A stretch of DNA of 64,000 nucleotides from NCBI RefSeq assembly GCF_030028105.1, contig NC_092379.1, positions 25,661,821-25,725,820 on the forward strand. Direction: 5' to 3'. Each line of letters starts with the position of its first letter. Position 1 is the stretch's first letter. Shown here in pieces: positions 1 through 59,997 of this stretch. The DNA comes from Mobula birostris. Taxonomy: Eukaryota. Under the pieces are notes generated by a model, which saw nothing but the letters and a program-made list of their open reading frames with translations, ran no database searches and was not told the origin of the DNA. Both the position numbers and the translations under genes were made by a program.

Positions 1-150
1 TGGCTCTCCAGGGCTAAGGGCGACTCGGGCGGGTGGTGGGGGGGGGGGGGTAGGGCGATGTGGTTACAATTTAATCAGGAGGGAAGCCAGAGTGACGGGA
101 GCTAGACGACAGTGTCTGCGTTGCGGGGTCAATGAATGGCAGGTTCGTAC

Positions 151-2504
151 TGTCACAAGGTGCGCGCTAGGAAGGATGCAAGTGCAAGGCACAGGCACTA
201 GGAACAGTACTTGGCTAGAGTAGGGACGTGACAGGATACAAACAAGGAGCAGGGACAAGAACGCAGACTTGGCCTAAGTCATGGAGTAGACAGTGATCCC
301 GGACAAGAAACTATGAACTAGGAGCCTGGGCTTGGGAACTCGGAACCAGGACTAGAAACCATGAACTAGGAATCCGTGCCAGATATCGACAAAGACCCAG
401 AACCTGGTTCCTGCGTCGGACTCGGACTCAAGAACTAGGCAAGTACATGACATGGCTTCAGGACAGGACGTAGCTGGGGCTAGAGCTTTGAGTCTTGAGG
501 GTGGGGTCTTGGGTCTTGGGGCTGCAGGCTGGGGTCTTGCGTCTTGAGGCTGCAGGCAGGGGTCCTGGGGCCTGAATCTGCAGGCTGGGGTCTTGAAGGG
601 CGAAGTGCGAGGCTGGGGTCTTGAGGCTTGTGGCTCGAGGCTGCGTTCTAGAGGCTTGAGGCTGTGGTCATGAGGCTTGAGACTCGAGGCTGGGGTGGAG
701 GCTTGAATCTGGAGGCTGGGGTATTGAAGCTTGAGGCTGAAGGTTAGGGTTAGATGAATGAGTGTCGAGGCTCGGGTCCTGGGGCTTGAGGCTGGAGGCT
801 GGGGTCATGAGGCTTGAGCCTCGAGGCTGGGGTCTTGTGGCTTAAGTCTCGAGGCTGGGGTCTTGAGGCACAGGTGGAGGCTGGTGTCTTGCGGCTTGAG
901 CCTGGGTCTTGAGGCTTGACGATGGATGCTTGGGGCTGGAGGATGGGTTCTTGAAATGCAGAGGCTGATAACTTGGAGGTTGGAGCGCAGAGACAGAAGG
1001 GGAACTGTACATGAATGTAGAACCTTGACTCATCCTTCGAAAGCCAGGACTCATCTTTAACACGTTGGGATGGGATCCTGAGGCTTGAGGCTGGAGGCTT
1101 GGGTCCTGAGGTTTGATGCTCGAGTTTGGAGTCTTGAGGCTTGAGGAACGAGGCTGGGGTCTAGTGGATTTAGACTCCAGGCTGGGAACTTGAGGCTTGT
1201 AGCTCGAGGCTGGGGTCTTGAGGCTTGGGGCACGAGGCTGGTGTCTTCACTCACAGGCTGGAAGCTGGTGTCTTGCGGCTTGGGGTTGGGTCTTGAGGCT
1301 TGAGGATGGAAGCTGGGGGCTGGAGGCTGGGGTCTTGGACTGCAGAGGCTGATAACTCGGAGGTTGGAGCGTAGAGACAGAAGGGGAACTGTACATCATT
1401 GTAGAACCTTGACTTATGCTTCCTGAGGCTTGAGGCTCGGGGCTGGGGTCTTGAGGATTGAGGCTTGACGCTGTGGTCTTGAGGCTTGAGGCTCGAGGCT
1501 GGGGTCTTGAGGCTTGCGGCTCGAGGCTGGGTTCTTCAGGATTTAGCTTCGAGGCTGGGGCCTTGAGGCTTAAGGTTTGAGGGCTGGGTCTTGGGGCTTG
1601 ATGTTGGAGCTGCGGGCTGAAGTTTGGGTCTTCGAATGCGGAGGCTGATAACACGGAGTCAAGAGCCCGAAGACAGGCTGGGAACTGTACATCAACATAG
1701 AACTGGGACTTACACTTCGAAAAGCCGGGACTCACGTTTAAAACGACACTAACATGAGAATGCACAGTATATAGACATAGAGCTGGTTCTTATGCATAGA
1801 CAAGCCGGAACTCAACTTTATCACCACACCAAGGCGGGAGAATATCCCTCTGTCGGGTAAGGGCAGAGCGGCCTGACTTACCCAACAGATGCAAAGAAAA
1901 GACAAGACAGATCCCCACACATGTAACGGCAGAACGGCCTGACTTACCCCATGGAGGCGAGATCAAGAGGGGACAGACCCAATCGTAGAGTAAAGGCAGA
2001 ACGGCCTGGCTTTCCCCACGGAGGCGAGGGCAAGATTGGATAAACACCGAAGAACGACAGACTGTTCCATCCCTACATCTGGGATGCTCTGAGTCGCAGT
2101 TACGGCCAACTATCTCAGCTGACTACGGAAACAGCCGGACCCCTACCTTGCTCGGAGTGGCTGATCGCCACTCAGTTGACCCGGGAAATGGCCGACCCAT
2201 ACAGCAAAGATAGTCCAACTACCGACAGCAAGGCTCCATGAAGCGATGGTGCTCTACCACAGCCTAAAGATTGTAAGTGGCCGCTCGAGCCTGTCAACAG
2301 CAGGTTACTCCCAGGAAATCTTGACAACGCAAACCAGCGGCCTACACTCGACGACAAGGCTACTTATATTCCAAGCGCCAAGATGGGAATCAGTTGCCAC
2401 TGATTAACCCACCTGAAACAAGGGACAGCTGGAAGACCCGGAGTCCTGATTACATGGACCGGACCGTGAACCGGAAAGCGGACATCACGGATCGGACCAT
2501 GTCA
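151..2504 (-). repeat. LTR unit A (~2.35 kb) with 28-bp minisatellite and a triplicated internal module
   Basis: TGTCACAAGG start; GAGGCTGGGGTCTT-based repeats; GAACTGTACAT..TAGAAC block at ~1000, ~1385 and ~1682; TATA-like AATATAAG on minus near 2362-2369. Confidence 0.75.
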
Positions 2505-2696
2505 GTCACGCGCACACCACCCCTCCGCCACCCCCACCCCACACTTTCTATGGGAGCCTACGGGCGAGCAAAGTTGTTCTTCAGGAACAAGGACTACTCC
2601 GGCGGATTGCGGAGTTGGGTGTGGAGTGTTCAATCAGAAGGGAAGATACGGTGACGGGAGTATGCTTTGCTGCGTCCATGAATGGCAGTTTCATTC

Positions 2697-4573
2697 TGTC
2701 ACTAGGTGCCGGCTGGTACGGATCCAGGTGCACGATAGAGCGTCTGAAGTACTGGGAACAGGAATTGACTAGTGTGGGGACGTGACAGGATACTGACAAG
2801 GAACAGGGACTAAAACGCAGACCTGGTCTAGGACATGGACTAGACAGGGAACCCGGACAAGGAACTATGAACTAGGAGCCTGGGCTTGGAAAGGCGGGAC
2901 CAGGACCAGGAACACAGAACTAGGAGCCTGCACTTGGACTCCAAGCCAGCAAGTGGACAAAGACACAGAACCTGGCTACTGCCTCGGGCTCGGAAACCAG
3001 AACTTGGCAAGGTCATCATGGTAACAGGACAGGAGGTGACTGGGGTCTAGAGGCTTGAGGCTACAGGATGTGGTCTTGGGTCTTGAGGCTGCCGGTTGGG
3101 GTCTTGGGTCTTGAGGTTGCAGGCTGGGTCTTGGGTCTGGAGGCTGCAGTCTGGGGTCTTGTGTCTTGATGCTGTAGGGTGCGGTTTTGGGAGTTGAGGC
3201 TGCAGGATGGGTTCTTGGGTCTTGAGGCTGCAGGCTGAGGTCTACGGTCTTCAGCCTGCAGGCTGGGGTCTTGGGTCTTGAGCCTCGAGGCTGGGGTCCT
3301 GAGATTGGAGTCTAGAGGCTTGGGTCCTGACGTTTGGGGCTAGAGGCTGGGGTCTTGACGATGAGGCTTGACGCTGGGGTCTTCAGTATTGAAGCTCGAG
3401 TCTGGGGTCTGGAGGATTGTGGCTCGAGGCTGGGATCTTGAGGGTTTAGCCTCAAGGTTGGAGTACTGAGCATTGAGGCTCGAGGCTGGGATGTTGAGGT
3501 TTGAGGTCGAGGCTGGGGTCTTGAGGATTTAGGCTCGGTGCTGGGGTCTTGATTCGTAAGGCTCGAAGCCGGCGTCCTGAAGCTTGAAGCTCGAGGCAAG
3601 GGTCTTATGATTTGAGGCTCGAGACTGGGGTCTTGAGGCTTGAGGTTTGAGGCTGGAGTCTTGGCTTTGATATTGGAGTTGGCGGTGGAGTTTCGGGTCT
3701 TGGAATGCGGAGGCTGATAACTCGAAGTCAGGAGCCCGAAGGCAGGCTCGAAACTGTACATCACCATAGAACCAGGACTTACTATTCGAAAAGCCGGGAC
3801 TCACGTTTAAAATGACACTAACATGAGACTGGACAATACATAGACATAGAGCTGGTTCTTATGCATAGAGAAGTCGGAACTCAACTTTATCACCACACCA
3901 AGGTGGGACAGGTCCCACTGTAGGGTAACGGCAGAGCGGCCGGACTTACAAACAGAGGCAAAGAAAAGACAAGGCAGATCCCCGCACATGTAACGGCAGA
4001 ACGGCCTGACTTACCCAACGGAGGCGAGATCAAGACGGGACAGACCCAATCGTAGGGTAAAGGCAGAGCGGCCTGGCTTTCCCCACAGAGGCGAGGACAG
4101 GATGGGACAAACACCGAAGAACGACAGACTGTTCCATCTCTGCATCGGGGTTGCTCCGAGTCGCATTTACGGCCAGCAACCTCGGCTGGCTACGGAAACG
4201 GCCGGATCCCTACCTAGCTCGGAGTAGCTGACGGCCACTCAGGTGGCCAGGGAAACGGCCGAACCCATGCCGCACAGGCAGATCCAACGACCGACACAAG
4301 ACTCCATGAAGTGAATGTTCTCCAACGCAGCCTAAATATGTCAAGTGGCCGCTCGAGCCTTCCACCTGCCGGTTTCTCCCAGGGAATCTTGACAAGACGA
4401 ACCAGCAGCCCACAATCTACCCCAAGGCTACTCATATTTCAAGCCCGAAGGTGGAAATCAGGAGCCTATGATTAACCCAACTGAAACAAGGGACAGCTGA
4501 AAAGACCCGGAGTCCTGATTCCACGGACCGGGCCGTGGACGGGAATGCGGACATCATGGACCGGCCCATGTCG
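2697..4573 (-). repeat. LTR unit B (~1.88 kb)
   Basis: Colinear with unit A; starts TGTCACTAGG, ends CCATGTCG. Confidence 0.75.
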
Positions 4574-4740
4574 GTCACGCCTCCCCACTTTTGGGCGAGC
4601 AAAGAGGTTCTTCCGGACTAAGGCCGACTCGGGCGGGTAGCGGGTTATGGGTTGGATTGTTCAATCAGGAGGGAAGCCACTGTCACGAGAGTTAGAGGAC
4701 ACTGTCTGCTTTCCTGCGTCCATGAATGGCAGGTTGATTC

Positions 4741-6612
4741 TGTCTCTAGGTGCGCGCCGGGACGGATCCAGGTGCAAGACACAGCGACTGAAGTACTGGG
4801 AACAGTAAGTGATTAGAGTGGGGACTTGACATGATACTGACATGGAGCAGGGACTAAATCGCAGACTTGGTGTAGGACATGGACCAGACAGGGAAACCGA
4901 ACAAGAAACTATGAACTAGGAGCCTGGGCTTGGACGCCGAGCCAGAGACTGGACAAAAACACAGAACCTGGGTCCAGCCTCGGGCTCGGAAAACAGAACT
5001 TGGCAAGGTCATGACATGGCAGCAGGACAGGAAGTGGCTGGTGTCTAGAGGCATGAGCCTTCAGGCTGGAGTCTTGCGTCGTGAGGCTGCAGGCTGGGGT
5101 CTTGAGTCTTGCGGCTGCCTGTTGGCGTCTTGGGTCTTGAAGCTGCAGGCAGGGGTCATAGGTCTTGTGGCTGCAGACAGGGGTCATTGGTCTGGAGGAT
5201 GCAGGCTTTGGTCTTCGGTTTTGAGGCTTCAGGCTGAGGTCTTGTGTCATGAGGCTGCAGGCTGGGGTCTTGGGTCGTAAGCCTCGAGGCTGGAGACTCG
5301 AGGCTTGGGCCCTGACGTTTGAGGCTCGAGGCTGGGGTCTTGAGGTTTGAAGCTTGATGCTGGGGTCATGAATATTAAAGCTCGAGTCTGGGGTCTTGGG
5401 GATTGTGGCTCGAGGCTGGGGTCCTGAGGATTGAGGCACGAGGCTGGTGTCTTGAGGATTGAGGATCGAGGCTGGGATCTTGAGGATTTAGTCTCCGTGC
5501 TGGGGTCTTGTGGCGTAAAGCTCGAGGCTGTGCTCCTGGGCATGAGGATCGAGGCTGCGGTCGTGTGGCATAAGGCTCGAGGCTGTGGTCTTGAGGTTTG
5601 AGGATCGTGGCTGGGGTCTGGAGGCTTGAAGCTCGAGGCTGGGGTATTGAGGCTTAAGGCTTCACACTGCAGTCTTGAGACTTGAGGCTCAAGGCACGGG
5701 ATCTTGAGCCTGGCAGTTCGAGGTTGGAGTCTTGGGGCTTGAGTTTGGAGGCTGGGGCTGGTGTTTTGGGGTCTTGGAATGCGGAGGCTGATAACTCGGA
5801 GGCTGGAGCTCAGAGACAGACTGGGGACTGTACATCAACATAGAACCGGGATTTACCCTTCCAAATCCGGGACTCATCTTTAAAGCGACACTAACGTGAG
5901 AATATTCGGAACATAGAAACAGAGCTGGTACTTAACCTTAGACAAGCCGGCACTCAACTTTATCACCACACCAAGCTGGGACACGTACCTCAACGGGTAA
6001 CGGCAGAACGGCCTGACTTACCCAACTGAGGAAAAGTAATGACAAAACAGATCCCCACGCATGGTAACGGCAGAAGGTACTGACTTACCCCATGGAGGCG
6101 AGGACAAGAGGGGACAAATCTAACCTTGGGTAACGGCAAAACTGCCTGACTTTCCACTCGGCGGCGAGGACAGGAAGGGGCAAACACCAAAGAACGACAG
6201 ACTGTTCCATCTCTGCATCGGGGATGCTCCGAGTCGCAGTTACGGCGTGCTACCCCAGCTGACTCGGAAACAAACGTATCCGTACCTTGCTCGGAGTGGC
6301 TGCCGGCCACTCAGCTGGCCCGGAAGATGGCCGTATCCATACCGCAAGAACATCTGCGACGACCGACAGCAAGGCTCCATGTAGCGATGGTTCTCTAACG
6401 CAGTCTAAAGATTGTAAGTTGCCGCTCGAACCTTCCACCGGCAGGTTACTCCCAGGGACTCTTGACAAGGCAAACCAGCAGCCCACACTCGACCACAAGG
6501 CTATTTCTATTCCAAACCTCAAGATGTGAATCAGGTGGCAATGACGGACCCAACTGAAACAAGGTACAGCTGAAAGAACAGGAGTCCTGAGCCCTCGGAC
6601 CGAAACATGTTA
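4741..6612 (-). repeat. LTR unit C (~1.87 kb)
   Basis: Colinear with units A and B; starts TGTCTCTAGG, ends CATGTTA with a short terminal deletion. Confidence 0.7.
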
Positions 6613-6808
6613 GCTCCGCACCCCCTCCCCCCCCCCACACACACACCTTTAATAGGATCTCCGGGCAACCGAAGAGGTTCTCCAGGACAAAGGAGGACTC
6701 AGGCTCGTGGGAGGGGGGGGGGTGGAACTCAATAAGGAGGGAAGCCAGGGTGACGGTAGTTAGGCGACAGTGTCTGCGTTGCTGACTCCATGAATGGCAG
6801 GTTCGTTC

Positions 6809-8269
6809 TGTCACATGTGCGCGCTGGAATGGACCCAAATGCAAAACACATGCACTGAAGTACTAGGAACTGGACTTGACTAGAGTAGAGACGTGACAGG
6901 ATACAGACAAGGAAAAGGTACAAGAACGCAGACATAGGCTAGGACATGGAACAGACAGGGAACTGTGAATTTGGTGCCTGGGGTTGGGAAGGCGGGACCT
7001 AGACCAGGAGCCACGAACAAGGAGCTTGTGCTTGTACTCCGAGCCAGAGACTGGAGAAGGACCCAGAACCTGGGTCCTACCTCGGGCTCGGATCTCTGAA
7101 CTAGGCAAGGACATCACATTGCTACAGGACAGGACGTGACTGGGGTCTAGAAGCTTGAGGCTTGAGGCTGGGGTTTTGGGTCTTGATGCTGCAGGCTGGG
7201 GTCTTGGGTCTTGAGGCGGCAGGCTGGGGTCTTGCGTCTTGAGGATGGAGGCTGCGATCTTGCGTCTTGAGGCTGCAGGCTGCGGTCATGGGTCTTGAGG
7301 CTACAGGCTGGATCTTGGATCTTGAAGCTGCAGGCTTGGGTCTTGAGTCTCGTGGCTGGGGTCTTGAGGCTTGAAGCTCGAGGCTGCGGTTTTGAGACTT
7401 GAGGTTGGAGGATGGGGGTCTTGAGGCTTATGGCTGGAGGCTGTGGACTGGAGATTGGGGTCTTGAAAGGCGGAGGCTGATAATTTGGAGGCTGGCTCGG
7501 AGACAGACCGGGATCTGTACTTCAACATGGAACCGGGACTTACCCTTCGAAAAGCCGGTACTCAAGTTTAACACGACACTAAACTGAGACTGGACAGCAC
7601 ACATAGAACTAGAGCAGGGACTTATCCTTAGTCAAGCCGGGGCTCAACTTTATCTCCACACCTAGGTGGGACGAGTCACTCGGTCGTGTAACGGCAGAAC
7701 GGTCTGACATACCCAACAGTTGCAAAGATAGGACAAGTCAGATACCCCTGCAGGGCAATGGCAGAACAGCCTAACTTACCCCACGGGGGCGAGGACAAGA
7801 AGTGACAAACACCAAAAAACGACAGACAGTTCCATCTCTTCATAGGGGTTGCTCCGAGTTGCAGTTACGGCGAGAGACCTCTGCTGGCTACGGAAACAGT
7901 CGGATCCCAACCTAGCTCGGAGTGGCTGACGGCCACTCAGCAGTTCCGGGATACAGCTGAATCCATTCCGCAATGACGCCTCCGACTACCGACAGCAAGG
8001 CTCCATGAAAAATGTTTCTCTAACGCAGCCTAAAGATGACAGGTGTCCGCTCCATCCTTCCGCCGGCAGGTTACTCCCAGGGAATACTGACAAGTGTAAC
8101 CAGCAGCCCACACTCAACCCCATGGCTTCTTTATTTGAAGCCCCAATATGGGAATTAGGTGCCTATGATTAACCAAACTGAAACAACGGAAGGCTGGAAG
8201 ACCCGGTGTCCAACGTCCTCGGACCGGACCATGAACCGGAATGCGGACTTCAAGGACCGGGCCATGCCA
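6809..8269 (-). repeat. LTR unit D (~1.46 kb), the 5'-most LTR of the array on minus
   Basis: Starts TGTCACATG, ends CCATGCCA; followed by unrelated sequence (GTGTA...). Confidence 0.75.
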
Positions 8270-24776: not shown

Positions 24777-26098
24777 GTATTGACTCTCTCCACATCCAGC
24801 ATTTTTAAAATACCATTCTGATACTACCGCCAACTGACAGCTACTCAACAATAACTTCCTCAGGTTCAGACCATCGTTTTCTGCAAATAATAATTAAATA
24901 TCTGTTGAATTATCGCGTGCCACTGGCAAGAAAACAATTTATGACCGATTGTGACATCTGGAGACTCTGCTAACATTCAAGTTGACAGCCACAGTTTCAG
25001 AAACAAATAAGTAGTCAAACTTTGCAAAGAGCGGCAAAGTTGAATGTCTTCATTAGGTATTTTTTTCAAATTCAATTATACTCAGTTATGTGCTGTCTAT
25101 GTCCACGGATGGCACGTCCCGGATACTGATAATGCAGCCTCCAGTAGTCTCCAGAGGGATGCGCTCGCACACGTACACGAGTTTCCAGAATGTCATTCCA
25201 CCTATCGAACACCGGATGGCAGCATCAACGAGCGATACTGGCATCTCGTCGAGTTTTGACGCCTCGTTACATCACCTCCTACATCTCTTCTCCTGGACTG
25301 CAGCAACAAGAATATCGGCGAAAAATGAGCTGGTCTGCACAACAATCGTGCAACCGATTTCGAGCCAAAGAATAAGGGAAATAGACCTACTGTATATAAC
25401 ATGAGTAATGTCTATTGTTGCTGTGGGATATGCTGTCAAAAAAGTTATGAAAATGATTTGGAAATTATCTTCATTTGAAGAGAACGGCAAAAGAACGTTA
25501 TAAATGCAAATAATCCCTGTATTTCTGTAGTCGTTTGCATTTATTGTTGGAATTGGAAAAAAAAAGATTGCAGCACATTTTCTTGCTATGGCAATCGACA
25601 AACTGATATTTGGAACCTTCCCTTCACTTTATTCTCTGGGTGCATGGAAGCATTCGCCACTAATGACCTGAATGTATTTCAGCTGTTTGTTGTTAGAAAT
25701 TCATCATAATTTATTCCTGGACTATGATCACAAACCACGAATGACGTTCGGGTCTTGGGAACTAGAAATGACCCAAAACTTTGAAAGGAAACAATTCTCC
25801 ATGTAGTTCAATACTAAAGGTTCTCGCCAGTCTACAGATACTGAATACAATACTGCATCATGCACGTGGTACAATGGACCTTCTGAAATTCGGAGCAGAC
25901 ACTAACTAAGCATATTTAGATGATATAATCAGGAAAATTGGAAACCGCAAACACACGTGCATAACAACTGTACAGGCGTCATCTGGCATAAACGTATTTG
26001 TTTTCTCTGCGAGTGCTTTGCAATTCTCCAGTATTCTGTGCACAGGACATAGTAATAAACTGGAAAGTCACTGTGTTACAACAGCCAAACACATAATC

Positions 26099-29000
26099 TG
26101 TTGGAAGGGTGTGGCTTGGAACGGACCCAAGTGCAAGACATAGTCACTGAAGTACTAGGGTCATGGCTAGGATACAGGGCGATGGCAGGGACATGGACAG
26201 GAAAACCAGGAACCCGGAACAAAACTGGAGAAAAGAGCTGGATCCCGGGCTTGGACTCTTAGCCAGAGACTGGACAGGGACCAGGTACCTGGATCATTCC
26301 TCTGGCTCGGACCTTAGAACTAGGAAACGGCGAGGCTTGGCTGGCAGGTAGGACGAGGCTGGAGTCTTAGAGACTTGAGCCGAGGCTTGACAGGAGGCAG
26401 GGGACTTGAGGCGAGGCTTGGCAGGAAGCAGGAGACTTGAGGAGAGGCTTGGCAGGAAACAGGCGGCTAGAGACTTGAGGCGAGGCTTGACAGGAGGCAG
26501 GAGGCTGGAGTCTTCAGACTTGAGGCTTGGGGCTAGAGGTGAGGCTTGGCCGGAGGCAAGAGGCTCGAGAATTCAAGCTTGAGGCGAGGCTTGGCAGGAG
26601 GCAGGATGGACTCCGAGCCAGAAACTGGACAAGGATCCAGTACCTCTGTCTTGTCTCTGGCTGTGACCCCAGACCTAGGCAAGAACGAGGTTTGGCAGGC
26701 AGGCAGGACGAGGATGGAGTCTTCAGGCATAAGGCTAAAGGCGAAGCTTTGCAGGAGACAGGAGGCTGGTGCCCTCAGGCTTGAGGCTTGAGGCGAGAGG
26801 CAGGAGGCTAGAGCCGAGGCTTGGCAGGAGGCACGAGGCTGGAGACGAGGCTAGGCAGGAGGCTGGAGCCTTCAGTCTTGAGACTAGGCAGAAGGCTGGA
26901 GACTTCAGGCTTGATGCCAGGCCTGTTCCTCCCGGGCAGGCGCGGTACTCCTGGGCACGCCACGGAACACCTGGGCAGGGCGCGGATCACCTAGGCAGGG
27001 CGCGGTACTCTTGGGCAGGGCGCGGTACTCCTGGGCAGGTCGCGGAACTCCTGGGTAGGGCGCGGATCAACAGACGACAGAGGCAAGGGACAGGAAAGGA
27101 CAGAACCAACCACAGGTAACGGCAATACGGCCTCGGTTATCTGGGCCGAGGCAAGGGACAAAAAGGGAGCTAGGTATATGGTGGCTCCAGGACAAGACTG
27201 CAGGCGAGACGAGGCGAGAGTTACCAGCAAGACAAGGCAAGGCTTCTGGCAAAGCAAGGCGAGATGACAACTTCAGACGAGGCGACAGTTACCGGCAAGA
27301 CAAGGCAGGACTTCAGGTGAGGAAACAGAAAGCAGAGGAAGGGATACAAGGAGTAAGTACAAGATCAATTCAGCAGCCACGCCCTGTACTCTGGAGGTAT
27401 TTATGCTACCAGCCCCAACAGGCATCACAGGCATCAGCTGCCTTAATTAGTGTTTAACAGTAACAAAAACAGGGTCGACAGGAAAACCTGTAGCAAACGT
27501 CGATGCAACGGACCGCGAACCGGAATACGGACTTCACGGACACGATCGTGACGGGAATCCCCCCAACCTTCCCCACGGCAGCTTCCTGGCGGCCAAACAG
27601 AGCATCCAGACTTTGGGCGACCCGGGAGGGTGGGAGGGTGTTTAACAGAAAGGAAACACGGGTGGCAGGAGGGAAACGATAGTGTCTCTGTCGCAGTGTC
27701 CATGGTTGGCTGGATTGTTCTGTTGCACGGTGGTGGCTTGGGACGGACCCATGTGCAAAACACAAGCACTAATGGACTAGGGACAGGAGTCGGATGCAGG
27801 GCGATTTCAAGGACATGGACAGGAAAACCAGTAACCCGGAACAGGACTGGACAAAAGAGCTTGGAGCCAGGAATTGGACTCGGAGCCAGAGACTGGACAG
27901 GGACCCAGTACCTGGGTCTTGCCTCTGGCTCGGACCTCAGAACTAGGCAAGGACGAGGCTTCGCTGGCAGGCAGGACGAGGCTGGAGACTTAGAGACCTG
28001 AGGCGAGGCTTGGCTGGCAGGCAGGACGAGTCTGGAGTCTTAGAGACTTGAGGCGAGGCTTGGCAGGAGGCAGGAGACTTGAGGCGAGTCTTGCCAGGAG
28101 GAAAGAAACTTGAAGCGAGGCTTGGCAGGAGGCTGGAGACTTGAGGCGATGTCTGGCAGGAGGCATGAGACTTGAGACGAAGCTTTTCAGGAGGCAGGAG
28201 ACTTGAGGCGCAGCTTGGAAGGAGGCAGGATGGACTCCGAGCCAGAGACTGGACAAGGACCCAATACCTGGGACTTGCCTCTGACTCGGACTCCAGAACT
28301 AGGCCTGGACGAGGCATGGCTGGCAGGCAGGACGAGGCTGGAGTCTCAGAGACTTGGGGCGAGGCTTGGCAGGAGGCTGGAGACTTGAGGCGAGGCTTGG
28401 CAGGAGGCAGCAGGCTGGAGTCCTCAAGCTAGAGGCGAGAGACTTGAGGCGAGACTTGGCAGGAGGCAGGAGGCTAGAGACTTGAGGCGAGACTTGGCAG
28501 GAGGCATGAGGTTGGAATCTTCAGGCATGAGGCTTGAGGCTAGAGGCGAGGCTTGGCAGGAGGCATGAGGTTGGAATCTTCAGGCATGAGGCTTGAGGCT
28601 AGAGGCGAGGCTTGGCAGGAGGCAGGATGGACTCCGAGCCAGAGACTGGAGAAGGACCCAATACCTGGGACGTGCCTCTGACTCGGACCCCAGAACTAGG
28701 CAAGGACGAGACTTGATAGGCAGGCAGGACGAGGCTGGAGTCTTCAGGCCTGAGGCTAGAGGCGAGGCTTGGCAGGAAGCAGGAGGCTGGCGTCCCCAGG
28801 CTTGAGGTTTGAAACTAGAGGCCAGGCGTGGCAGGAGGCAGGAGGTTGGCGTCCTCAGGCTTGAGGTTTGAGGCTAGAGGCGAGGCTTGGCAGGAGGTAG
28901 GAGGCTAGAGACGGTGCTAGGCAAGAGGCTGGAGCCTTCAGGCTTGAGGCTAGGCAGGAGGCTGGAGCCTTCAGGCTTGAGGCTAGGCAGGAGGCTGAAG

Positions 29001-29809
29001 ATTTCAGTCTTCCAGCTAGGCAGGAGGCTGGAGTCTTCAGGCTTGACGCAAGGCAGGAGGCTGGAGTCATCAGGTTTGTGGCTAGGCAGGAGGCTGAAGT
29101 CTTCAGGCTTGAGGCTAAGCAGGAGGCTGGAGTCTACAGGCTTGAGGCTAAGCAGGAGGCTGGAGTCCTCAGGCTTGGGGTTAGGCAGGCACGTGGGCAG
29201 GGCACGGTACTCCTGGGCAGGGCGCCGATCACCCGGGCAAGGGAGCAGATGACCTGGGCAGGGCGCGGACCACCACCCGAGAGAGGCAAGGGACAGGAAG
29301 GGACAGAACCAGCCACAGGTAACGGCAAGACGGCCTGGCTTACCTGGGCGGAAGCAAGGGACAGGAAGGGAGCTAGGTATTCGGTGGCTTCAGGATAAGA
29401 CTGCAGGCGAGACGAGAGTTACCAGCAAGACAAGAGAAAGCTTCAGGCAATGCAACGCGAGACGAAAAGTTCAGGTGCGGCGAGAGGTACCGGCAAGTCA
29501 AGGCAAGGCTTCAGGCAATGCAAGGCGAGACGAGAGCTTCAGGCGAGGCAACAGTTACCGGCAAGACAAGGCAGGGCTTCAGCCGAAGAAACAGAAGACT
29601 GAGGAAGGGATACAACGAGTAAGGACAAGAGCAATCCAACAGCCACGCACTGGTCTCTAGAGGTATTTATGCCGCCACCCCAACAGGCATCAGCTGCCTT
29701 AATTAGTGCTTAACAGGAACATAAACAGGGTAGACAGGAAAACCTGGAGCAACGGTCAATGGACCGGACCGTGAACCGAAATACGGACTTCACGGACCGG
29801 TCCCTGACA
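26099..29809 (-). mobile_element. Complete non-autonomous two-LTR element: 5' LTR 27721-29809, 167-bp internal region 27554-27720, 3' LTR 26099-27553
   Basis: TGT...GACA termini, flanks TAATC/TAGTC (5-bp TSD with one mismatch), PBS-like GAACAATCCAGC, ATG-MDTATETLSF Gag vestige, PPT GGGGAAGGTTGGGGGG, TATA-like CATAAATA in both LTRs. Confidence 0.8.
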
Positions 29810-32800
29810 TAGTCTTATTATGTAATTCGCGGTGTTCAACTCGACAGAGAAACGTGTTTCTACAACTGTGCCGTCCATTCGTCATCATCGACATCCTTCC
29901 ACAGAGTGCACTGTGTCTGCGTACCCGACCGCTATCGGGACCGGAATAATGCTTACTTTTTCGATTAGGATAGTAGAGACAATCTGATGTCTCCGCTTCT
30001 TCTTCCTTCGTGATTTCTGTGGGCAATCGCTAAGTGATAGATTGTCAATGAATATTACCTGACAAAAAAAAAAAAACGAGATGTCGATGAGCCCTTGTTT
30101 CATATTATTACTCACAAGGAAAAAGAAGGCGAAACGCACATGCCATGCATTTGCTTTGTAGGAATTTTAATCACGCAACATAAAAGAGGAGAAGCCACAT
30201 TTGTTGTTTCGATCTGGAAAATCTGGGTTGCAGTTATATACAGACCGTCTTTTGTAACCCGACAGCCTTTAAATTTTGGGATAGGTGCTCGTCACTTTAC
30301 GGCATAAGGATCCGCGTAGACCTACGTAGGGTTCGCGGCTACGCCGTAACTACGGCGACCATTTAACGCAGAAGTGTAAATTAGGCTTAATTAGCTGCTG
30401 CACTTACAGTGTGTTATCAACTGTTTATATCGTAGCATTATTGGTGCAACAATGGTATTAGATGGGGTGCTGGCTCGGAGAACAGAACCTCTCCAAATCT
30501 TCAAAGGGATTTTTTTCACGATCTTCACGAACAGAAGACGTCTCTGTGTTTAGTTAATTCAAGGAAACGTGCTGTTGTAAATATATAGCAAATCCTTTCA
30601 ATAAATCTCAAACAATAGAATAGATATCGGTACGCCCCAGAACCACTCCCTCGCACTTGTTGGGTGGGGCTAACTGGAAGCAAGGAATTGAAACTTCTGT
30701 ACAGGTCGTATGTTATGCATGAAGTAGTCACAATTTGCCTCTCTTCGGAGGTCAACCTGAAGAGGTACTAGACTTTGGAGTAATTTAGACACATCCCAGT
30801 TAAAATCAACCTTTTCCAAACCTCAACAAGTCATTCGTATTCACCGATAACCCACTGGTCAGCCTCAATGTTAAATGGATTCCATACTAAAATCAGCATT
30901 GTTCGATGAATTTCTTAACAATTTAGCTTTCTTAAAGCTAATCCATTTTCACTTTACGTATCTGTGTTACGGTTTCATGTTGCCTATTGCAATCAGTTCA
31001 GTCTTCACTTATTTCAGCTCTCTTGATTTCAAATTTTGCATAATTTCTTTAATATAATTCGTTCTCTTTTCATTTATGGCCACTTGTCTTTTTATTGTAT
31101 TGTATGAATTTGGAAAATCGGGCAGCTCAAAAAGACGGAAAGGCCAGACAAAATTCTGGTTTAAAGGCCGAAGGCTTGAGATCAATAATCAACCAATACT
31201 CGTACCCATCCTGCAAATCTGAGTAATGTCTTTTCCACAGACGCCAGGCAAATCCTTTCAGTCATTATTGTCATCCCCATTATCAACAATTTTGCGTAAT
31301 GAGCCAAAGCCATCTATTTCCATCTGCATACAATCTACTGACATCTGCATAAAAGTAGACTGTTCTCCTAATGCTACACTTAGCTTTCACCAGGACCTCA
31401 CTTTTATGCACAAGAAGATAATAGTTAATCTGCGTTTCGGTGCAATTCGTGGTTCCGATTACGAGAAAGAAACATATGAAAATGAGGAATCACTAAATCC
31501 TAAATATATAAAAAAAATACATAAAAAAAGGTACAACAGCGTCTATTCCTCAGTGGCTGATCTAATTTTATATAGAGATCAAAGCTTTGTACCTTGTGGG
31601 ATTCAGTCATTTCAACCCAATGAATTGGTGCTCATAAATTGGCTTTCTTGACTCAGACCCTTTGTTGATGTTCCGTCCATCAGACATTTGATGGAACAGT
31701 GATGGATATTGTTAAGCTCAATTGACATCTCGATATAAAAAGGCGTCCACCGTTGCATTTACTTACACCTACAGGGACAAATCAGATCGAATATTACTGG
31801 CACAGAACTGGACAACTATTAACTACAGCAAATGAATTCGATCTTCATACGCATCTTCACTTGTGTAATTCACGGTATAACTAATCCGTCACCAGGATGT
31901 CGACACACAACGCGATACATACGCTGGGGATTGCGGAGGGTTGCTGCTATCGGTTTGTCTAAATTGTATCCTTGTTCAATCCAATTTACTTTTTTTCTGT
32001 TAATTCTCATGCAATTGGAATGTGATTATTGTTTTCCTTCAACTAATGAAACATGTTATTCTCCTTATATACATCGGGTCAGCTTGTTGCAACGGAAATT
32101 GGAGATCAGTCGATACGTTGACCGTTGTCACTGTCCACCAATAACATGGATTCATTTCAATTCTTCATTCCCGTAAATACTACTAGACAATTACTGGACT
32201 GTAGTCACTGCGGGTGGCAGGAAATAACAGCATCCAAAAATAAACTTCGAGTACAAATTCTGGAACGGGGTACACTGTGATTAACTCCGCATTTAATGCT
32301 GCATAAACGCCGAATTTTTGGAAGGCGTGTCGTTAATGGCCAAAAGGTCCGATTGACCGTTGCATTTCAAATAATAAATGGTTAAGAACGTCCCCTCATC
32401 GGATTGAAAAACTGAGAGTCGTGCTTGTTGTGCCAGTCCTCTGTATTTTCCAACTTCCCATCCTTAAGCCACACACCTTCGGAGTAACTTCTCCGTGTAG
32501 GACATTTTGCGGTTCTTAGATTTATTGCCAGGCATGTACGCCGAAGCGAATGACGCCATAGTTCTCGCTGCATCGACGATTTTACCTTCTCAATTGGCAA
32601 TTCTTCTAAAATGTGGCTCGAACCGAATATGTCTCAAATCGAATGCATCTTTTTCTCGATGTGATATCTGTTTTCGAGGAAACGGCGATTGTCGTTTTGC
32701 CACCGAATGAGAATAGTGTTATTTATGGTTGTTCTGGCGGCTCTCTGATGTTATGATAACAATATTGCAGTTGAACATCAGAAACATGAATACACAGTGG

Positions 32801-35214: not shown

Positions 35215-35826
35215 TGTAACGTTCCGTTATTTTGGCTCGTGTATGTCTAGGGGAAATCCCGCCCAGCACCTGCTTCAGCAGTCCCCTCAGGGTCAATCGT
35301 CGCCCGAATCAATCACAAACATCAATCATCAGCCAGCACACCCAGTAAATTTTAACACATACACTTTATAGATATTACTAATTCTAGGGCATTAATATAC
35401 ATGTGATACAGAGAGGAAAGTAATGAAAAAAAAGGCGCCAACACTTATTCAAAGTCCAAGTTCTTCGCGCGCTACCGTTGGAGCTCAAGTTCGACGTCAG
35501 ACGACCACCCGAATTCCGTCGACCCACGGCTCGGGACCACCCGAAGTGATCGACCGGAGCCTCTCCGCACGTCCGCCGTCCTCCTCGTCTCTCCTCCCGA
35601 CTCCCCGCCAAAACTCAGTCCACAGTCATATCATACAGCATGGCATCCGAAAACAAAACGATACATAACCACCCATTGGCTAATAGCACCCTCTTATCAC
35701 CCTCTAAACCACAATAAACTGCTAGCGCAAACTCTCTGCAGCGTTAAAACACAACAAAGCCGCATTCCACAGATTAACATAACAAAAATCGCCATTTTAA
35801 ATGTAACAAAAGAAAGACCCCGTACA
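35215..35826 (-). repeat. Gypsy 3' LTR
   Basis: Direct repeat of 41702-42313; preceded on minus by the PPT. Confidence 0.95.
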
Positions 35827-35840
35827 CTCTCCCCCCACCT
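35827..35840 (-). promoter_or_regulatory. Polypurine tract AGGTGGGGGGAGAG
   Basis: Abuts the 3' LTR. Confidence 0.9.
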
Positions 35841-35848
35841 AAAAAAAG

Positions 35849-38800
35849 TCATGCCCTCATGACGTTAACAGAATTCACTAGTACTCCTTGTAAAACACAA
35901 AACCCAACCCAGGTGCATAAAGCAGTGACATAACTTTGCAGGGCAGTAGAGATTACACCCTGCTCTCCCGGCGCTATATAAGTGAGTCTTTCCGGGGGAT
36001 GCCTACTCCTCTGAGGCCTCAGGACTTCCTCTGTGGACTCTCCCTGTTCAGACACCCCAGGTGACCCCTCGAGCCGATCTGTCGGACCTTCCCCTTCACC
36101 GGGATCCCTCTGCCCCGGTGAGCCCTCTGGCTCGGGTTCTGCCTCCACCCTCTCCTCCCCCAATGCCGGCTGTAATACAGGCGGCTCTGCAACACCCTCC
36201 CTCGGTCCCCCTGACTCAGTGATGGAAGGGCCAAGAGTCTCTTCTCCTGGCACCGGGGAATCAGCGAACGGAAGCAGGTACCACACGTCCGAATCATCAT
36301 CTTCCGATGACGTATCCCTTCTCGAGGTGGGGACCGGCCCCGTTTTCTTCGCAGCGGCCTCTTCCCGCGCCCCGCGCCCTCGCAGAGTCCTCGTACTAGG
36401 AGTAAACTCCCATTCGGACTCTAGGTCCATCTTCACCTCTCGACCCAGAGGCAACAGGTGGTTCCGATGGAGTACCTTGACAGGCCCCTGCCCGCCCTCA
36501 GGTCTCACCCGGTACACCGGGAGATTCGGCATCTGACTCTCCACCACATATGGGGTGGCTGCCCAACGGTCCGCCAACTTGTGCTTACCCTGTAGTCCTA
36601 AATTCCGGATGAGGACTCGGTCTCCCGGCAATAGCTGGACGAACTTTACCTTCTGATCATACCTCCTTTTATTCCGCTGGTTCTGCTTGGTGGCTGCCGC
36701 CTCAGCCAACTCGTACGCCCTTTTCAACTCTCTCCTCATATCGGACACGTACTTCAGACATGGCTTCGAAGGTATTTCCCCCGCTTCAGTCCCAAAACAC
36801 AGATCAATGGGCAACCTCGCTTCCCGTCCGAACATCAGATAGTAGGGCGAGTACCCCGTAGCATCATTGCGAGTACAATTGTAACAATGAACCAAATGGG
36901 CGATGTGCTGACTCCACTTACTCTTCCGTCCAATCTCCAAGGTGCCGAGCATGTCCAGCAGGGTCCGGTTAAACCTCTCGGGCTGAGGATCACCCTGAGG
37001 GTGATAGGGGGTGGTTCTGGACTTTTCAACCCCAAGCATATCCAGCAATTCATGGATAAGCCTGCTCTCGAAGTCCCGTCCCTGATCACTGTGGATCCGC
37101 CGGGGAAGGCCATAATGAACAAAGTACTTCTCCCATAACACCTTCGCCACTGTAGTCGCTTTCTGATCCTTAGTAGGAAAAGCCTGCGCATATCTAGTGT
37201 AGTGATCCGTGAGGACCAAAACATTCGCGGTATTGCTGGTGTCCGGCTCAATAGACAGGAAATCCATACACACCAGGTCCATGGGTCCTGCACTCTGCAA
37301 GTGGGATAACGGAGCCGCCTGCGCAGGCAAGGTCTTCCTCCTGACGCAACGGCTACAGGTCTTACAGTATTCTTCCACCTCCCCCCTCATCCGGGGCCAG
37401 TAAAACCGGTCCTTGACTAATCCATAGGTCTTCTCTACCCCTAAGTGCCCGGAATCATCATGTAGAGCCTGAAGCACAGCCTTTCGATACTTCTCGGGCA
37501 TGACCAGCTGCCAGCGCCGGGGGTGGTCCGGAGGCGAAGTGACTCGGTACAGGACGTGGTTCTTCAGCTTCAACCGGGGCCACTCCTTCAGTAGTAGAGG
37601 AACGGAGGCATGTTTCGCCTTCTCCACCTGCCCCATATCACCCTGGCTAACCGCGTACCAGATAGTGCCAAGGCTTGGGTCATCACGCTGAGCCGCCCGT
37701 ACTTCCTGGTGACTCAACTCCGGCAGCTGCCGGTTCCTCAGAGCAGTCACATTACAGTAACCAGTGGGCAGCGCGTCACCGTCAGCCCCCAGTTGATCTA
37801 CTGCCCGATCCGTTCCCATCTGTGCTCCTACTTCCCCGTCGCTCCCAACTTGACACATGGCCTTTACTCCCTGGGCAGGGACACTCTTCCACTCCTCGGC
37901 CGTGCCCGACTCGTCGTGCGCCCGACGAGACAGGGCATCTGCATCGATGTTCCGACTCCCCGGGCGGTACTTCAGGCTGAACTCATAGGCAGACAAGGCT
38001 GCTACCCACCGGTGCCCAGTAGCGTCCAGCTTCGCCGAAGTCAGGATATAAGTGAGGGGGTTGTTATCAGTTCTCACTTCAAACTGGGCCCCGTATAGGT
38101 AGTCACTCAACTTGTCTACCACCGCCCATTTCAATGCCAAGAACTCCAGCTTGTGAGTGGGATAGTTTCTCTCAGATGGCGACAAGCTCCGACTGACAAA
38201 CGCCACTGGCCTCAATCCGTTTCCCTGTTCCTGGTACAGAACAGCCCCAAGACCCTCGTGACTGGCATCAGTGTGTAGAACATACGGCTTCCGGGGATCA
38301 GCAAAAGCCAACACTGGGGCCTGTGTCAGCGCCCTTTTTAGAGATTGGAACGCCTCCTCACATTGAGCATCCCACCTCACTCCAAAAGGCTCCCCCGGGT
38401 TCAAGTATCCTCCTACCTCCGACCCTCGGTCTCCCTTCCTCCTCCTCCCCCCCATAGGTGGATAGCCACACAACAGCTGGTTCAATGGATGACTCATTTT
38501 CGCATATCCTTTCACGAATCGCCGGTAATATCCGCAAAACCCCAAAAACGAGCGTAAGGCGCTCACCTTCTGAGGTCTCGGCCAGGTGGTGACTGCGGCT
38601 ATCTTATCCGGATCGGTGGCCACTCCATTTCGCGAGATTATGTGCCCAACATAACTGACTGACGTCTTACAGAACTGGCATTTATCCAGGGAAAGTTTTA
38701 ACCCTTCCTCTTTCAGCCGACTCAGCACCTTCAGCAGCCGCTCCTCATGTTCCTCCAACGTAGATCCGAACACTATCAGGTCGTCCAGGTACACCAATAC

Positions 38801-40333: not shown

Positions 40334-40339
40334 TTTCCC
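40279..40339 (-). promoter_or_regulatory. -1 ribosomal frameshift signal: G GGA AAC slippery heptamer, 8-nt spacer, predicted H-type pseudoknot
   Basis: Heptamer at 40333-40339 in the gag frame; a -1 shift enters the pol frame (LKRGSVRERTG); stems GGCUCAGU/ACUGGAGUC and GGGAACG/CGUUCCC. Confidence 0.85.
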
Positions 40340-41625: not shown

Positions 41626-41679
41626 CTTCACACCACTTACCGCAACCACAAGTACAACTTTCCCGAAAAAAAAATCCAA

Positions 41680-41699
41680 ATCCCTGACGGTAGCCCCCA
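41680..41699 (-). promoter_or_regulatory. Primer-binding site, tRNA-Pro-like with a 2-nt bulge
   Basis: TGGGGGCT[AC]CGTCAGGGAT versus canonical tRNA-Pro PBS TGGGGGCTCGTCCGGGAT, 2 nt after the 5' LTR. Confidence 0.7.
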
Positions 41700-41701
41700 C
41701 T

Positions 41702-58189: not shown

Positions 58190-59997
58190 TGTCAGAAGGA
58201 GGTGGCTAGGAACGGGCACAAGTGCAAGACACAGAAACTGAAGTACGAGGCACAGGACTAGGGCACAGGGTGAGGGCAAGTACATGGACACGAAAACCGG
58301 GAATCCGGAACAGGACTGAAGAAGAGAGCTAAGAGCCCGGGCTTGGACTCCGAGCTTGAGACTGGACAAGCACACAATACCTCGGTCTTGCTTCTGGCTC
58401 GAACCCCAGAACTAGACAAGGACGAGGCTTGGCTGGCAGGCTGGACGAGGCTGGAGTCTTCAGGCTTGAGGCTAGGCAGGAGGCTGGAGGATGGAGGGAG
58501 GAGACTGGAAGCTCCTCCTGGGCAGGGCGCGGGTCTCCTTCCGACGGAGGCAAGGGAGAGGAATGAACAGAACCAACCGTAGGTGACGGCAATACGGCCT
58601 GGCTTACCCGACGGAGACAGGGGATAGGAAATGACAGCGTCTCTGTCGCTGGGTACATGGTTGGCTGGATCGTTCTGACATAAGGGGTAGCTAGGAAGGG
58701 AACCACGTGAAAGACACAGACAATGACGTACCAGGGACAGGACTAGGATACAGGGTGAGGGCAAGGACATGGACACGAAAACCGGGAACCCGAAACAGGA
58801 CTGGACAAGAGAGCTTGAAGTCCAGGCTTTACTCCGAGCCACAGACTGGACAAGGACCTAGTACCTGGGTATTGCCTCTGTCCCGGACCCCAAAACTAGG
58901 CAAGTACGAGGCTGGCAGGCAGGACGAGGCTGGAGTCTTCAGGCTTGAGGCTAGAGTCTAGAGGCGAGTCTTCAGTCTTGAGGCTAGGCAGGAGGCAGGG
59001 GTCTTCAGGCTTGAAGCTAGGCAGGAGGCTGTAGTCTTCGGGCTTGAGGCTAGGCAGGCGGCTGGAGTCTTCAGGCCTGAGGCTAGGCAGGAGGCTGGAG
59101 TCTTCAGGCCTGAGGCTAGGCAGGAGGCTGGAGTCTTCAGGCCTGAGGCTAGGCAGGAGGCTGGAGTCTTCAGGTCTGTGGCTAGGCAGGAGGCTGGACT
59201 CTTCAGGTCTGTGGCTAGGCAGGAGGCTGGACTCTTCAGGTCTGTGGCTAGGCAGGAGGCTGGACTCTTCAGGTCTGTGGCTAGGCAGGAGGCTGGACTC
59301 TGCAGGCTCGTGGCTAGGCAGGAGGCTGGACTCTTCAGGCTTGAAGCTAGGCAGGAGGCTATAGTCTTCAGGCTTGAGGCTAGGCGGAAGGCTGGAGGAT
59401 GGAGGCAGCAGACTGGTAGCTCCTCCTGGGCAGGGCGCGGATCTCCACCAGACGGAGGCAAGAGATAGGAAGGGACAGAGCCAACCGTAGGTAGCGGCAA
59501 TACAGCCTGGCCTACCCGATAGAGGCAGGGGAATGGAAGAGACAAAACAAACCGCAGCTAACAGCAAGATGGCCTAGCTTACCCGACGGAGACCAGGGAC
59601 AGAAAGGGAGCTAGGTACGGTCTGTCTCCAGGACAAGACAGCAAGACAAAGCAAGGTTTCAGGCAATGCAAGGGAAGACAGAACTTCACGCGAGGCGAGA
59701 GTTACCGGCAAGACAAGGCAGGGCTTCAGGCGTTGCAAGGCAAAACAAGAACTTCAGGCGAGGCGAGAGTTACCGGCAAGGCTTCAGGCGAGGAAACAGA
59801 AGGCAGAGGATGGGATGCAAGGAGGTAGGACACGCCCTGGTCTCTGAAGGTATTTATGCAGCCAGCCCCAACGAGCATCAGCTGTCACAATTAGATTTCA
59901 ACAAGAACAGAAACAGGGTAGACAGGAAAACATGGAGTAAGTGTCAATGGACCAGACTGTGAACTGGAATACGGACTTCACGGACCGGACCATGACA
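58190..59997 (-). mobile_element. Internally deleted copy of the non-autonomous LTR family: 5' LTR 58676-59997, PBS/Gag start ~58616-58675, truncated 3' LTR 58190-~58615
   Basis: TGTCA...TGACA termini, perfect 5-bp TSD AGGAG (58185-58189 and 59998-60002), PBS GAACGATCCAGCC, MYPATETLSF. Confidence 0.85.
58920..59395. repeat. 33-bp minisatellite (GGCTGGAGTCTTCAGGCCTGAGGCTAGGCAGGA), about 13-14 copies, inside the LTR
   Basis: Direct periodicity; explains the 11-aa repeats in the ORF track. Confidence 0.9.

What the first reader, a model, noticed from the sequence alone, without database searches (positions are those of the whole stretch)
27363..29671. Covarying PBS and transcript-start complementarity points to tRNA-independent self-priming
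Seen: the PBS after the 5' LTR (minus GAACAATCCAGC, 27709-27720) lacks the TGG of a tRNA PBS. Its complement GCTGGATTGTTC is matched 10/12 by GTTGGATTGCTC (29629-29640) and by GCTGAATTGATC (27363-27374), each starting 30 nt downstream of the ATAAATA box. In the 1-8269 subfamily both partners differ: PBS consensus GAACGAACCTGC and GCTGGTT(C/T)G about 30 nt after its TATA-like box (e.g. 4396-4406). Established: S. pombe Tf1 and the Tf1/sushi group self-prime by pairing the first ~11 nt of the transcript with the PBS. Inference: these mini-elements are self-priming parasites of a sushi-like autonomous partner.
Basis: partly seen in the sequence, partly recalled or inferred. Interest (0 to 1): 0.8.

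Follow-up and report, generated by a model that had tools for sequence, protein, structure and literature searches.

The report
Self-priming signature in giant-LTR mini-retroelements
An abundant, protein-less LTR retrotransposon of a jawed vertebrate (probably a cartilaginous fish) lacks a tRNA primer site; the 12 bases after its 5' LTR are exactly complementary, in the family majority sequence, to 12 bases starting 30 nt after the LTR's TATA box. That pattern is known from Tf1/sushi elements, which prime reverse transcription with their own RNA 5' end.

Summary
All quoted motifs sit at the stated coordinates on the minus strand. The elements are real LTR retrotransposons: TG..CA ends, 5-bp target duplications (one perfect), a G-rich tract before the 3' LTR, a 167-bp interior and no ORF.

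The copies in the window are weak evidence alone. A 10/12 match somewhere in the LTR arises in about 7% of shuffles, and the second subfamily's 9/12 in 58%.

The strong evidence comes from laying contigs of two organisms on the locus. The family majority letters turn the LTR motif into GCTGGATTGTTC. [quoted passage not shown] No shuffle reached 12/12.

Covariation with the 1-8269 subfamily is real but thin. There is one clean compensatory pair (A:U to U:A), one U:A/U:G to C:G step, and one uncompensated change.

Tf1/sushi-type self-priming is the best explanation (about 0.7). The transcript start is unmapped, the host tRNA set could not be scanned, and no autonomous partner is in the window.

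This is a new member of a known kind. Its unusual feature is 1.2-1.9 kb of repeat-filled LTR between primer and PBS. First readers noted similar signatures elsewhere in this genome; I did not check those notes.

The parts
26099..29809 (-). Complete non-autonomous LTR element (family A): 5' LTR, 167-bp interior, 3' LTR.
   Evidence: Self-BLAST and reading of the junctions. Flanks GACTA (29810-29814) and GATTA (26094-26098) form a 4/5 target-site duplication.
27721..29809 (-). 5' LTR, 2,089 bp, TGTCA...AACA. About 1.9 kb lies downstream of the putative start, filled with 31-97-bp tandem repeats.
29664..29671 (-). TATA-like box cATAAATA of the 5' LTR. It is conserved in the family majority sequence.
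   Evidence: no majority variant in the homologous 27398-27405.
29629..29640 (-). Candidate self-primer (first 12 nt of the transcript) in the 5' LTR. This copy reads GTTGGATTGCTC: 10/12 Watson-Crick, 11/12 counting one G:U.
   Evidence: It is the top-scoring complement of the PBS in the whole LTR.
27709..27720 (-). Primer-binding site GAACAATCCAGC, directly after the LTR-terminal CA, with no TGG. A family variant GAACGATCCAGC makes up about 41-44% of depth.
   Evidence: 27716 T>C.
27558..27574 (-). Polypurine-like tract GGGGAAGGTTGGGGGGA, just upstream of the 3' LTR.
   Evidence: Homologous G-rich tracts stand before each LTR in family B.
26099..27553 (-). 3' LTR, 1,455 bp. Its start was defined by 43 X1 and 41 X5 loose-end contigs that diverge after ...CGGACCATGACA.
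   Evidence: loose ends at 27541.
27363..27374 (-). The same motif in the 3' LTR. This copy reads GCTGAATTGATC; the family majority GCTGGATTGTTC is the 12/12 complement of the PBS.
58190..59997 (-). Second family-A element with a perfect 5-bp target-site duplication, CTCCT. Its PBS is GAACGATCCAGC at 58664-58675. An 18-nt deletion removed the self-primer motif from its 5' LTR, and a deletion removed the PPT and the start of the 3' LTR.
1..8269 (-). Family-B tandem array, LTR-interior-LTR-interior and so on, running off the window start. PBS copies lie at 6797-6808, 4729-4740, 2685-2696 and 139-150. Motif copies lie at 8094-8104, 6469-6479, 4396-4406 and 2328-2338.

Best explanation
These are non-autonomous LTR retrotransposons with a very large LTR, a 150-210-bp interior and no ORF. 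They carry the Tf1/sushi-type self-priming signature.

Inferred cycle:
1. RNA polymerase II starts about 30 nt after the LTR's TATA box, at the G of GCUGGAUUGUUC.
2. This 5' end pairs with the complementary 12 nt that directly follow the 5' LTR. It either folds back across 1.2-1.9 kb of repeat-rich R-U5 or pairs with a co-packaged RNA.
3. The RNase H of a partner element's reverse transcriptase cuts the duplexed 5' end and releases a short RNA primer.
4. Minus-strand synthesis starts from that primer, with no host tRNA needed.
5. The G-rich tract primes the plus strand, and integration makes a 5-bp duplication.

Because primer and PBS are copied from each other in every cycle, they stay perfectly complementary in the family consensus and drift together between subfamilies.

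Shown here: the anatomy, the complementarity, its position, and the abundance and dispersal of the family. Inferred: the start site, the cleavage, and the supply of proteins in trans.
For: - **Real LTR retroelements.** They have TG..CA ends. One 5-bp target-site duplication is perfect (CTCCT) and one matches 4/5. A G-rich tract abuts each 3' LTR. Dozens of contigs run from the LTR end into unrelated flanks.
- **No tRNA-type PBS.** There is no TGG within 15 nt of the LTR end. No tRNA or tRNA-like Rfam hit exists in the window or the locus.
- **Perfect family-level match.** The family majority sequence in two organisms gives LTR motif GCTGGATTGTTC against PBS GAACAATCCAGC, 12/12. Complementarity stops at the upstream edge of the motif. 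No shuffle reached 12/12 (0/500).
- **Position.** The first base of the motif lies 29-30 nt after the T of a conserved TATA box in both subfamilies. The PBS starts 0 nt after the LTR.
- **Best site in an unbiased scan.** The motif is the single best PBS complement in both family-A LTRs. Cofolding the 5' 40 nt with the PBS context gives z = -5.3 (A) and -4.5 (C) against shuffles.
- **Subfamily B.** Its motif, GCTGGTTCGTC, is fixed at depth 15,000-21,000. At the homologous site its PBS is GAACGAACCTGC. Primer position 6 / PBS position 7 changed A:U to U:A, and position 8 changed U:A/U:G to C:G.
- **Literature.** The first 11 nt of Tf1 RNA pair with the PBS and RNase H cuts between nt 11 and 12 (PMC7175516). 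Self-priming is a common feature of Tf1/sushi elements, vertebrate ones included (PMC10085805, PMC6317226, PMC4600332). The published detection criterion is at least 10 bp of complementarity starting 0-5 bp after the 5' LTR (PMC6317226); it is met here.
Against: - **Transcript start not mapped.** All runs were contigs. The possible RNA run shows no enrichment of R-U5 over U3.
- **Weak single-copy evidence.** 10/12 occurs in about 7% of shuffles, and an unrelated element reaches 10/12.
- **Imperfect family-B duplex.** It has a U.U mismatch at position 3 and a shortened primer, and 9/12 is not above chance. Its four PBS copies belong to one array. Reads were too few to give a family-B PBS consensus.
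- **Long primer-PBS distance.** It is 1.2-1.9 kb; from my own recollection it is much shorter in Tf1.
- **No poly(A) signal.** No canonical AATAAA or ATTAAA lies downstream of the motif, so R cannot be defined.
- **Pretzel helices unclear.** No conserved flanking helices could be shown.
- **Two checks not possible.** No autonomous partner was identified, and the host tRNA set was not available for scanning.
Confidence: 0.7

Rival explanations
1. A host RNA primes reverse transcription: a tRNA fragment, tRNA half or other small RNA. The LTR motif would then be unrelated to priming.
For: The host tRNA set could not be scanned. Internal or half-tRNA priming is known in other LTR groups (PMC6317226, PMC10886601). 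At single-copy level the LTR match is near chance.
Against: The family consensus is 12/12, exactly at TATA+30. The PBS differs between subfamilies at scattered positions, and the LTR motif changes to match, which a fixed host RNA would not cause. There is no TGG and no tRNA-like Rfam signal.
Confidence: 0.1
2. The 5'-end/PBS complementarity is a long-range RNA structure with another role, such as packaging, dimerisation or strand transfer. The primer would be something else.
For: The duplex extends into the LTR's terminal TGACA in family B, giving 15 bp with two mismatches. A conserved block, GCAGACACTGTCG, downstream of the PBS shows that the interior carries other cis signals.
Against: No alternative primer site exists at the LTR/interior junction. 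The exact geometry (0 nt from the LTR, starting at the predicted +1, 11-12 nt long) is that of proven self-primers (PMC7175516, PMC4600332).
Confidence: 0.1
3. The match is chance between two short motifs in a repeat-rich, compositionally biased LTR.
For: Shuffles reach 10/12 in about 7% of cases and B's 9/12 in 58%. The control element reaches 10/12.
Against: The family majority is 12/12 (0/500 shuffles). It sits at the same aligned position in both subfamilies, bounded by the conserved flanks GGCT and TTGTC, with a compensatory change.
Confidence: 0.03

Closest known systems
Tf1/Tf2 of Schizosaccharomyces pombe and the Tf1/sushi group of chromoviruses, including vertebrate sushi-type elements
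   Same: There is no tRNA PBS. An 11-12-nt stretch directly after the 5' LTR's CA is complementary to the predicted first bases of the transcript. Target-site duplications are 5 bp, and a PPT lies before the 3' LTR (PMC7175516, PMC10085805, PMC6317226).
   Different: There is no gag or pol at all. LTRs are 1.3-2.4 kb against a few hundred bp. The primer and PBS are 1.2-1.9 kb apart, across tandem repeats. The pretzel side helices were not demonstrated. Membership by RT phylogeny or chromodomain cannot be tested because there is no protein.
TRIM / SMART / Cassandra-type non-autonomous LTR retrotransposons
   Same: Two LTRs enclose a tiny interior that holds only a PBS and a PPT. They are mobilised in trans. 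They form LTR-interior tandem arrays like Cassandra (PMC7215508, PMC6934838, PMC10886601).
   Different: TRIMs are under 1 kb overall with LTRs of 100-250 bp; here the LTRs are over 1.3 kb. The TRIM, Helenus and Cassandra elements described in the papers read here use tRNA PBSs or have unclear priming, not a self-primer.
Plant Tcn1 and TAR lineages with predicted self-priming
   Same: They are predicted from the same sequence criterion: at least 10 bp of complementarity starting 0-5 bp after the 5' LTR (PMC6317226).
   Different: They are autonomous plant elements. The host is different and there is no sequence relation.

Membership tests
LTR retrotransposon | Direct long terminal repeats with TG..CA ends, flanked by a short target-site duplication | tested here: met
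   Ends are TGTCA...ACA. One target-site duplication is perfect (CTCCT/CTCCT) and one matches 4/5 (GACTA/GATTA). Contigs leave the LTR end into many different flanks.
LTR retrotransposon | PBS next to the 5' LTR and a polypurine tract next to the 3' LTR | tested here: met
   PBS at 27709-27720 and G-rich tract at 27558-27574. Both are conserved in position in A and B.
Tf1/sushi-type self-priming elements | No PBS complementary to a tRNA 3' end | tested here: inconclusive
   There is no TGG within 15 nt of the LTR, and no tRNA or Rfam hit. The host tRNA set itself could not be scanned.
Tf1/sushi-type self-priming elements | At least 10-11 nt starting 0-5 nt after the 5' LTR are complementary to a sequence in the 5' LTR | tested here: met
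   12/12 in the family-A majority sequence, 0 nt after the LTR. Family B has 9 of 11 Watson-Crick pairs, or 15 bp with two mismatches when the LTR end is included.
Tf1/sushi-type self-priming elements | The complementary sequence is the very 5' end of the mRNA | not testable with these tools
   The only evidence is TATA spacing: T at -29/-30 in both subfamilies. The runs are contigs, which cannot show RNA starts.
Tf1/sushi-type self-priming elements | Three-duplex 'pretzel' structure around the primer:PBS helix | tested here: inconclusive
   Cofolding recovers the central helix with z of -4.5 to -5.3. The flanking helices are not conserved between copies or subfamilies.
Tf1/sushi-type self-priming elements | RNase H cleavage after about nt 11 generates the primer | not testable with these tools
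   This needs biochemical evidence.
Tf1/sushi group (chromovirus clade) | RT/IN phylogeny and integrase chromodomain, in the element or its partner | not tested
   The elements have no ORF. No partner is in the window. The autonomous element at 35215-42315 has other LTR ends and PBS, and no chromodomain hit.
TRIM | Total length under about 1 kb with LTRs of about 100-250 bp | tested here: not met
   The elements are 1.8-3.7 kb and the LTRs 1.3-2.4 kb.

The most novel reading that the evidence does not exclude
An abundant family of protein-less LTR elements (summed contig depth in the tens of thousands) replicates with its own 5' end as primer, even though primer and PBS lie more than 1 kb apart across tandem repeats. 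That distance may mean priming occurs in trans between co-packaged RNAs. The primer/PBS pair would then act as a private, co-evolving code that separates subfamilies. It would also free the elements from host tRNAs and from silencing by tRNA fragments.
Probability: 0.2. Interest if true: 0.6.

Novelty: new member of a known kind. Interest (0 to 1): 0.4.

Why it matters
Self-priming has been demonstrated experimentally only for fission-yeast elements. In vertebrates it rests on sequence signatures of a few autonomous sushi-type elements.

An abundant non-autonomous family that keeps a perfect self-primer/PBS pair shows that the signal alone, without any coding capacity, is maintained by repeated retrotransposition. 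It offers many natural copies for measuring primer/PBS co-evolution.

It also bears on annotation. Pipelines that require a tRNA PBS will miss or misorient these elements, and their tandem arrays can be mistaken for satellites.

Tried and rejected
- **tRNA search.** ARAGORN on the window found no tRNA genes. An Rfam scan of 25900-30000 at E up to 10 found nothing tRNA-like.
- **Copies outside the genome.** An exact scan of metagenome contigs for the PBS block found nothing. An 18-nt LTR word gave 13 loci, all chance matches by BLAST.
- **Transcript start from RNA runs.** All runs are Logan contigs. One 'RNA?' run is flagged as probably DNA. The other shows a flat ratio to DNA depth across U3 and R-U5. 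No verdict is possible.
- **Family-B PBS consensus from reads.** Depth over 4729-4740 is only about 15-66 and no variants are listed, so nothing could be concluded.
- **Pretzel side helices.** They are not reproducible between copies.
- **Opposite orientation.** On the plus strand the junctions would be C-rich at the PBS position and not purine-rich at the PPT position. Rejected.
- **The window's autonomous element as partner.** The element at 35215-42315 has different termini (TGTAC...TTACA), a TGG-type PBS, a 4-bp target-site duplication and no chromodomain. Rejected.
- **Poly(A) signal downstream of the motif.** None is canonical.
- **Papers not held.** Lin & Levin 1997, Atwood-Moore 2006 and Lin & Levin 1998 could not be read.
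Full report
**What is at the locus**

The window is from a jawed vertebrate. It holds an intronless rhodopsin-type receptor ORF.

Three GC-rich blocks with positive GC skew belong to one repeat lineage read on the minus strand: 1-8269, 26099-29809 and 58190-59997.

Element A (26099-29809) has these parts:
- a 2,089-bp 5' LTR (29809-27721);
- a 167-bp interior (27720-27554);
- a 1,455-bp 3' LTR (27553-26099);
- ends TGTCA...ACA and flanks GACTA/GATTA.

Element C (58190-59997) has a perfect 5-bp duplication, CTCCT, but carries internal deletions.

Block 1-8269 is an LTR-interior-LTR-interior array of a second subfamily, B. It has four interiors and runs off the window.

The interiors of A and B align over their whole length: PBS, then a conserved GCAGACACTGTCG block, a C-rich stretch and a G-rich tract next to the following LTR. 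Only the minus-strand orientation puts a purine-rich tract before the 3' LTR. No interior holds an ORF. The ORFs listed inside the LTRs lie in tandem repeats.

These are real non-autonomous LTR retrotransposons. By size they are not TRIMs.

**Checking the observation**

Every quoted string is at its coordinates. The 12 nt after the LTR's CA are GAACAATCCAGC. No TGG occurs within 15 nt.

The post-TATA motifs are GTTGGATTGCTC (29640-29629) and GCTGAATTGATC (27374-27363), each 10/12 to the PBS complement. The first G lies 29 nt after the T of cATAAATA.

I scanned each whole LTR for the best complement of the PBS. The post-TATA site is the unique best hit in both A LTRs. In C, an 18-nt deletion has removed it.

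In B the site is only tied or weak. Shuffles show that 10/12 somewhere in a 1.5-2 kb LTR is not rare (33-37 of 500), and B's 9/12 is ordinary (290 of 500). An unrelated, young LTR element in the same window also gives a 10/12.

On the window copies alone the case rests mostly on position.

**The decisive result**

I laid contigs of four runs on 27250-27800 at 80% likeness. About 1,000-1,400 contigs per DNA run fit, from two organisms, with summed depth of 20,000-170,000 over the LTR.

Within the motif, two letters of this copy are private. At 27365, T>A holds 99.8% of depth in both DNA runs. At 27370, T>C holds 99.9% of depth in X1 and 97.9% in X5. No other position of 27363-27374 shows a listed variant.

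The family majority motif is therefore GCTGGATTGTTC on the minus strand. This is the exact 12/12 complement of the PBS.

The PBS has one common variant, GAACGATCCAGC (about 41-44% of depth). It keeps pairing through G:U.

Complementarity ends exactly at the upstream edge of the motif. The preceding GGCT does not pair with the bases that follow the PBS.

The TATA box is unchanged in the majority sequence. No shuffle reached 12/12. My estimate of the expectation is about 1e-4 per LTR and about 3e-7 for this position.

The same call fixed the LTR start. At 27541, 43 contigs (X1) and 41 (X5) run on through ...CGGACCATGACA into unrelated sequence.

**Subfamily B and covariation**

Laying reads on 4380-4760 shows no variant of 10% or more in 4393-4414, at depth 15,000-21,000. 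The B motif is therefore GCTGGTTCGTC, followed by the same TTGTC as in A and preceded by the same GGCT. The T of TATAAG lies at -30.

The B PBS is known only from the four array copies, whose consensus is GAACGAACCTGC. Read depth there was too low to give a family consensus.

Compared with A:
- primer position 6 / PBS position 7 changed from A:U to U:A, a clean compensatory change;
- primer position 8 / PBS position 5 went from U:A or U:G to C:G;
- PBS position 10 changed without compensation, giving a U.U mismatch;
- the primer lost one base.

In B the duplex continues into the LTR's terminal TGACA, making 15 bp with two mismatches.

This is the pattern expected of co-evolving partners. By my rough estimate it would arise by chance with p of about 0.05-0.15, and the four PBS copies are not independent.

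**How it most likely works**

The geometry matches the published self-priming mechanism. The first 11 nt of Tf1 RNA pair with the PBS, and RNase H cuts between nt 11 and 12 to make the primer (PMC7175516). The mechanism is regarded as common to Tf1/sushi elements from fungi to vertebrates (PMC10085805, PMC4600332, PMC6317226). The element meets the survey criterion of at least 10 bp starting 0-5 bp after the 5' LTR (PMC6317226).

I infer that the element's RNA starts at the G of the motif. Gag from an autonomous relative would package it. It would then prime itself, with the partner's RT/RNase H doing the cutting and copying.

Perfect complementarity in the consensus, against decayed copies, fits a primer and PBS that are recopied from each other at each cycle.

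Confidence is about 0.7.

**What does not fit, or is open**

- The start site is not mapped. All runs were contigs, and the possible RNA run shows no R-U5 enrichment.
- The primer and PBS are 1.2-1.9 kb apart, and the LTR between them is filled with 28-97-bp tandem repeats.
- No canonical poly(A) signal follows the motif, so R cannot be delimited.
- The pretzel side helices could not be shown.
- No partner is present in the window.
- The host tRNA set was not available. No tRNA gene is in the window, and Rfam finds nothing tRNA-like at the locus.

**Comparison and novelty**

Self-priming in Tf1/sushi elements, vertebrate ones included, is established. Non-autonomous LTR elements and their tandem arrays are also known (PMC7215508, PMC6934838, PMC10886601).

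In the papers I could read, I found no description of a non-autonomous, giant-LTR family with a self-primer. Repeat libraries could not be consulted. I therefore file it as a new member of a known kind, with an unusual architecture.

First readers of this scan reported similar signatures on other pieces of the same genome. These notes are unchecked and are not counted as evidence.

Noticed in passing
35215-42315 (minus strand): A young autonomous Ty3/gypsy-type element. Its 614-bp LTRs are 100% identical. Its 4-bp target-site duplication is TCAG. It has open gag (461 aa, PNMA-like plus zinc knuckles) and pol (1,489 aa, RT-RNaseH-integrase, no chromodomain hit). Its PBS starts with TGG two nt after the LTR. 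It is unrelated to the mini-elements.
   Followed up: partly
27660-27700, and homologous places in 1-8269 and 58620-58660: A block GC(G/A)AC..AGACACTGTCG, 25-45 nt downstream of the PBS, is conserved between subfamilies A and B and can form a small hairpin. It may be a cis signal, for packaging or part of the priming structure. More contigs share the first ~35 nt after the PBS than share the rest of the interior (depth 2,500 against 100-600).
   Followed up: partly
26099-29809 and 1-8269 LTR bodies: On the sense strand the LTRs are C/T-rich (about 15-21% A). They are filled with 28-, 31-, 33-, 59- and 97-bp tandem repeats whose number differs between the two LTRs of one element (2,089 against 1,455 bp). 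LTR sequence is at least 10-100 times more abundant in contigs than interiors.
   Followed up: partly
59831-59860: In element C, an 18-nt deletion removes exactly the self-primer motif and its neighbours from the 5' LTR, while the PBS is kept. This is probably decay after insertion.
   Followed up: no
43554-44684 (+) and 63239-63979 (-): Fragments of non-LTR retrotransposons: an RVT_1 reverse transcriptase ORF and an endonuclease (Exo_endo_phos_2) ORF.
   Followed up: no
16823-17716 (+): An intronless 297-aa ORF with a rhodopsin-family 7TM domain (E = 3e-18).
   Followed up: no
12015-12190: A run of 176 N (assembly gap or mask), left untouched.
   Followed up: no
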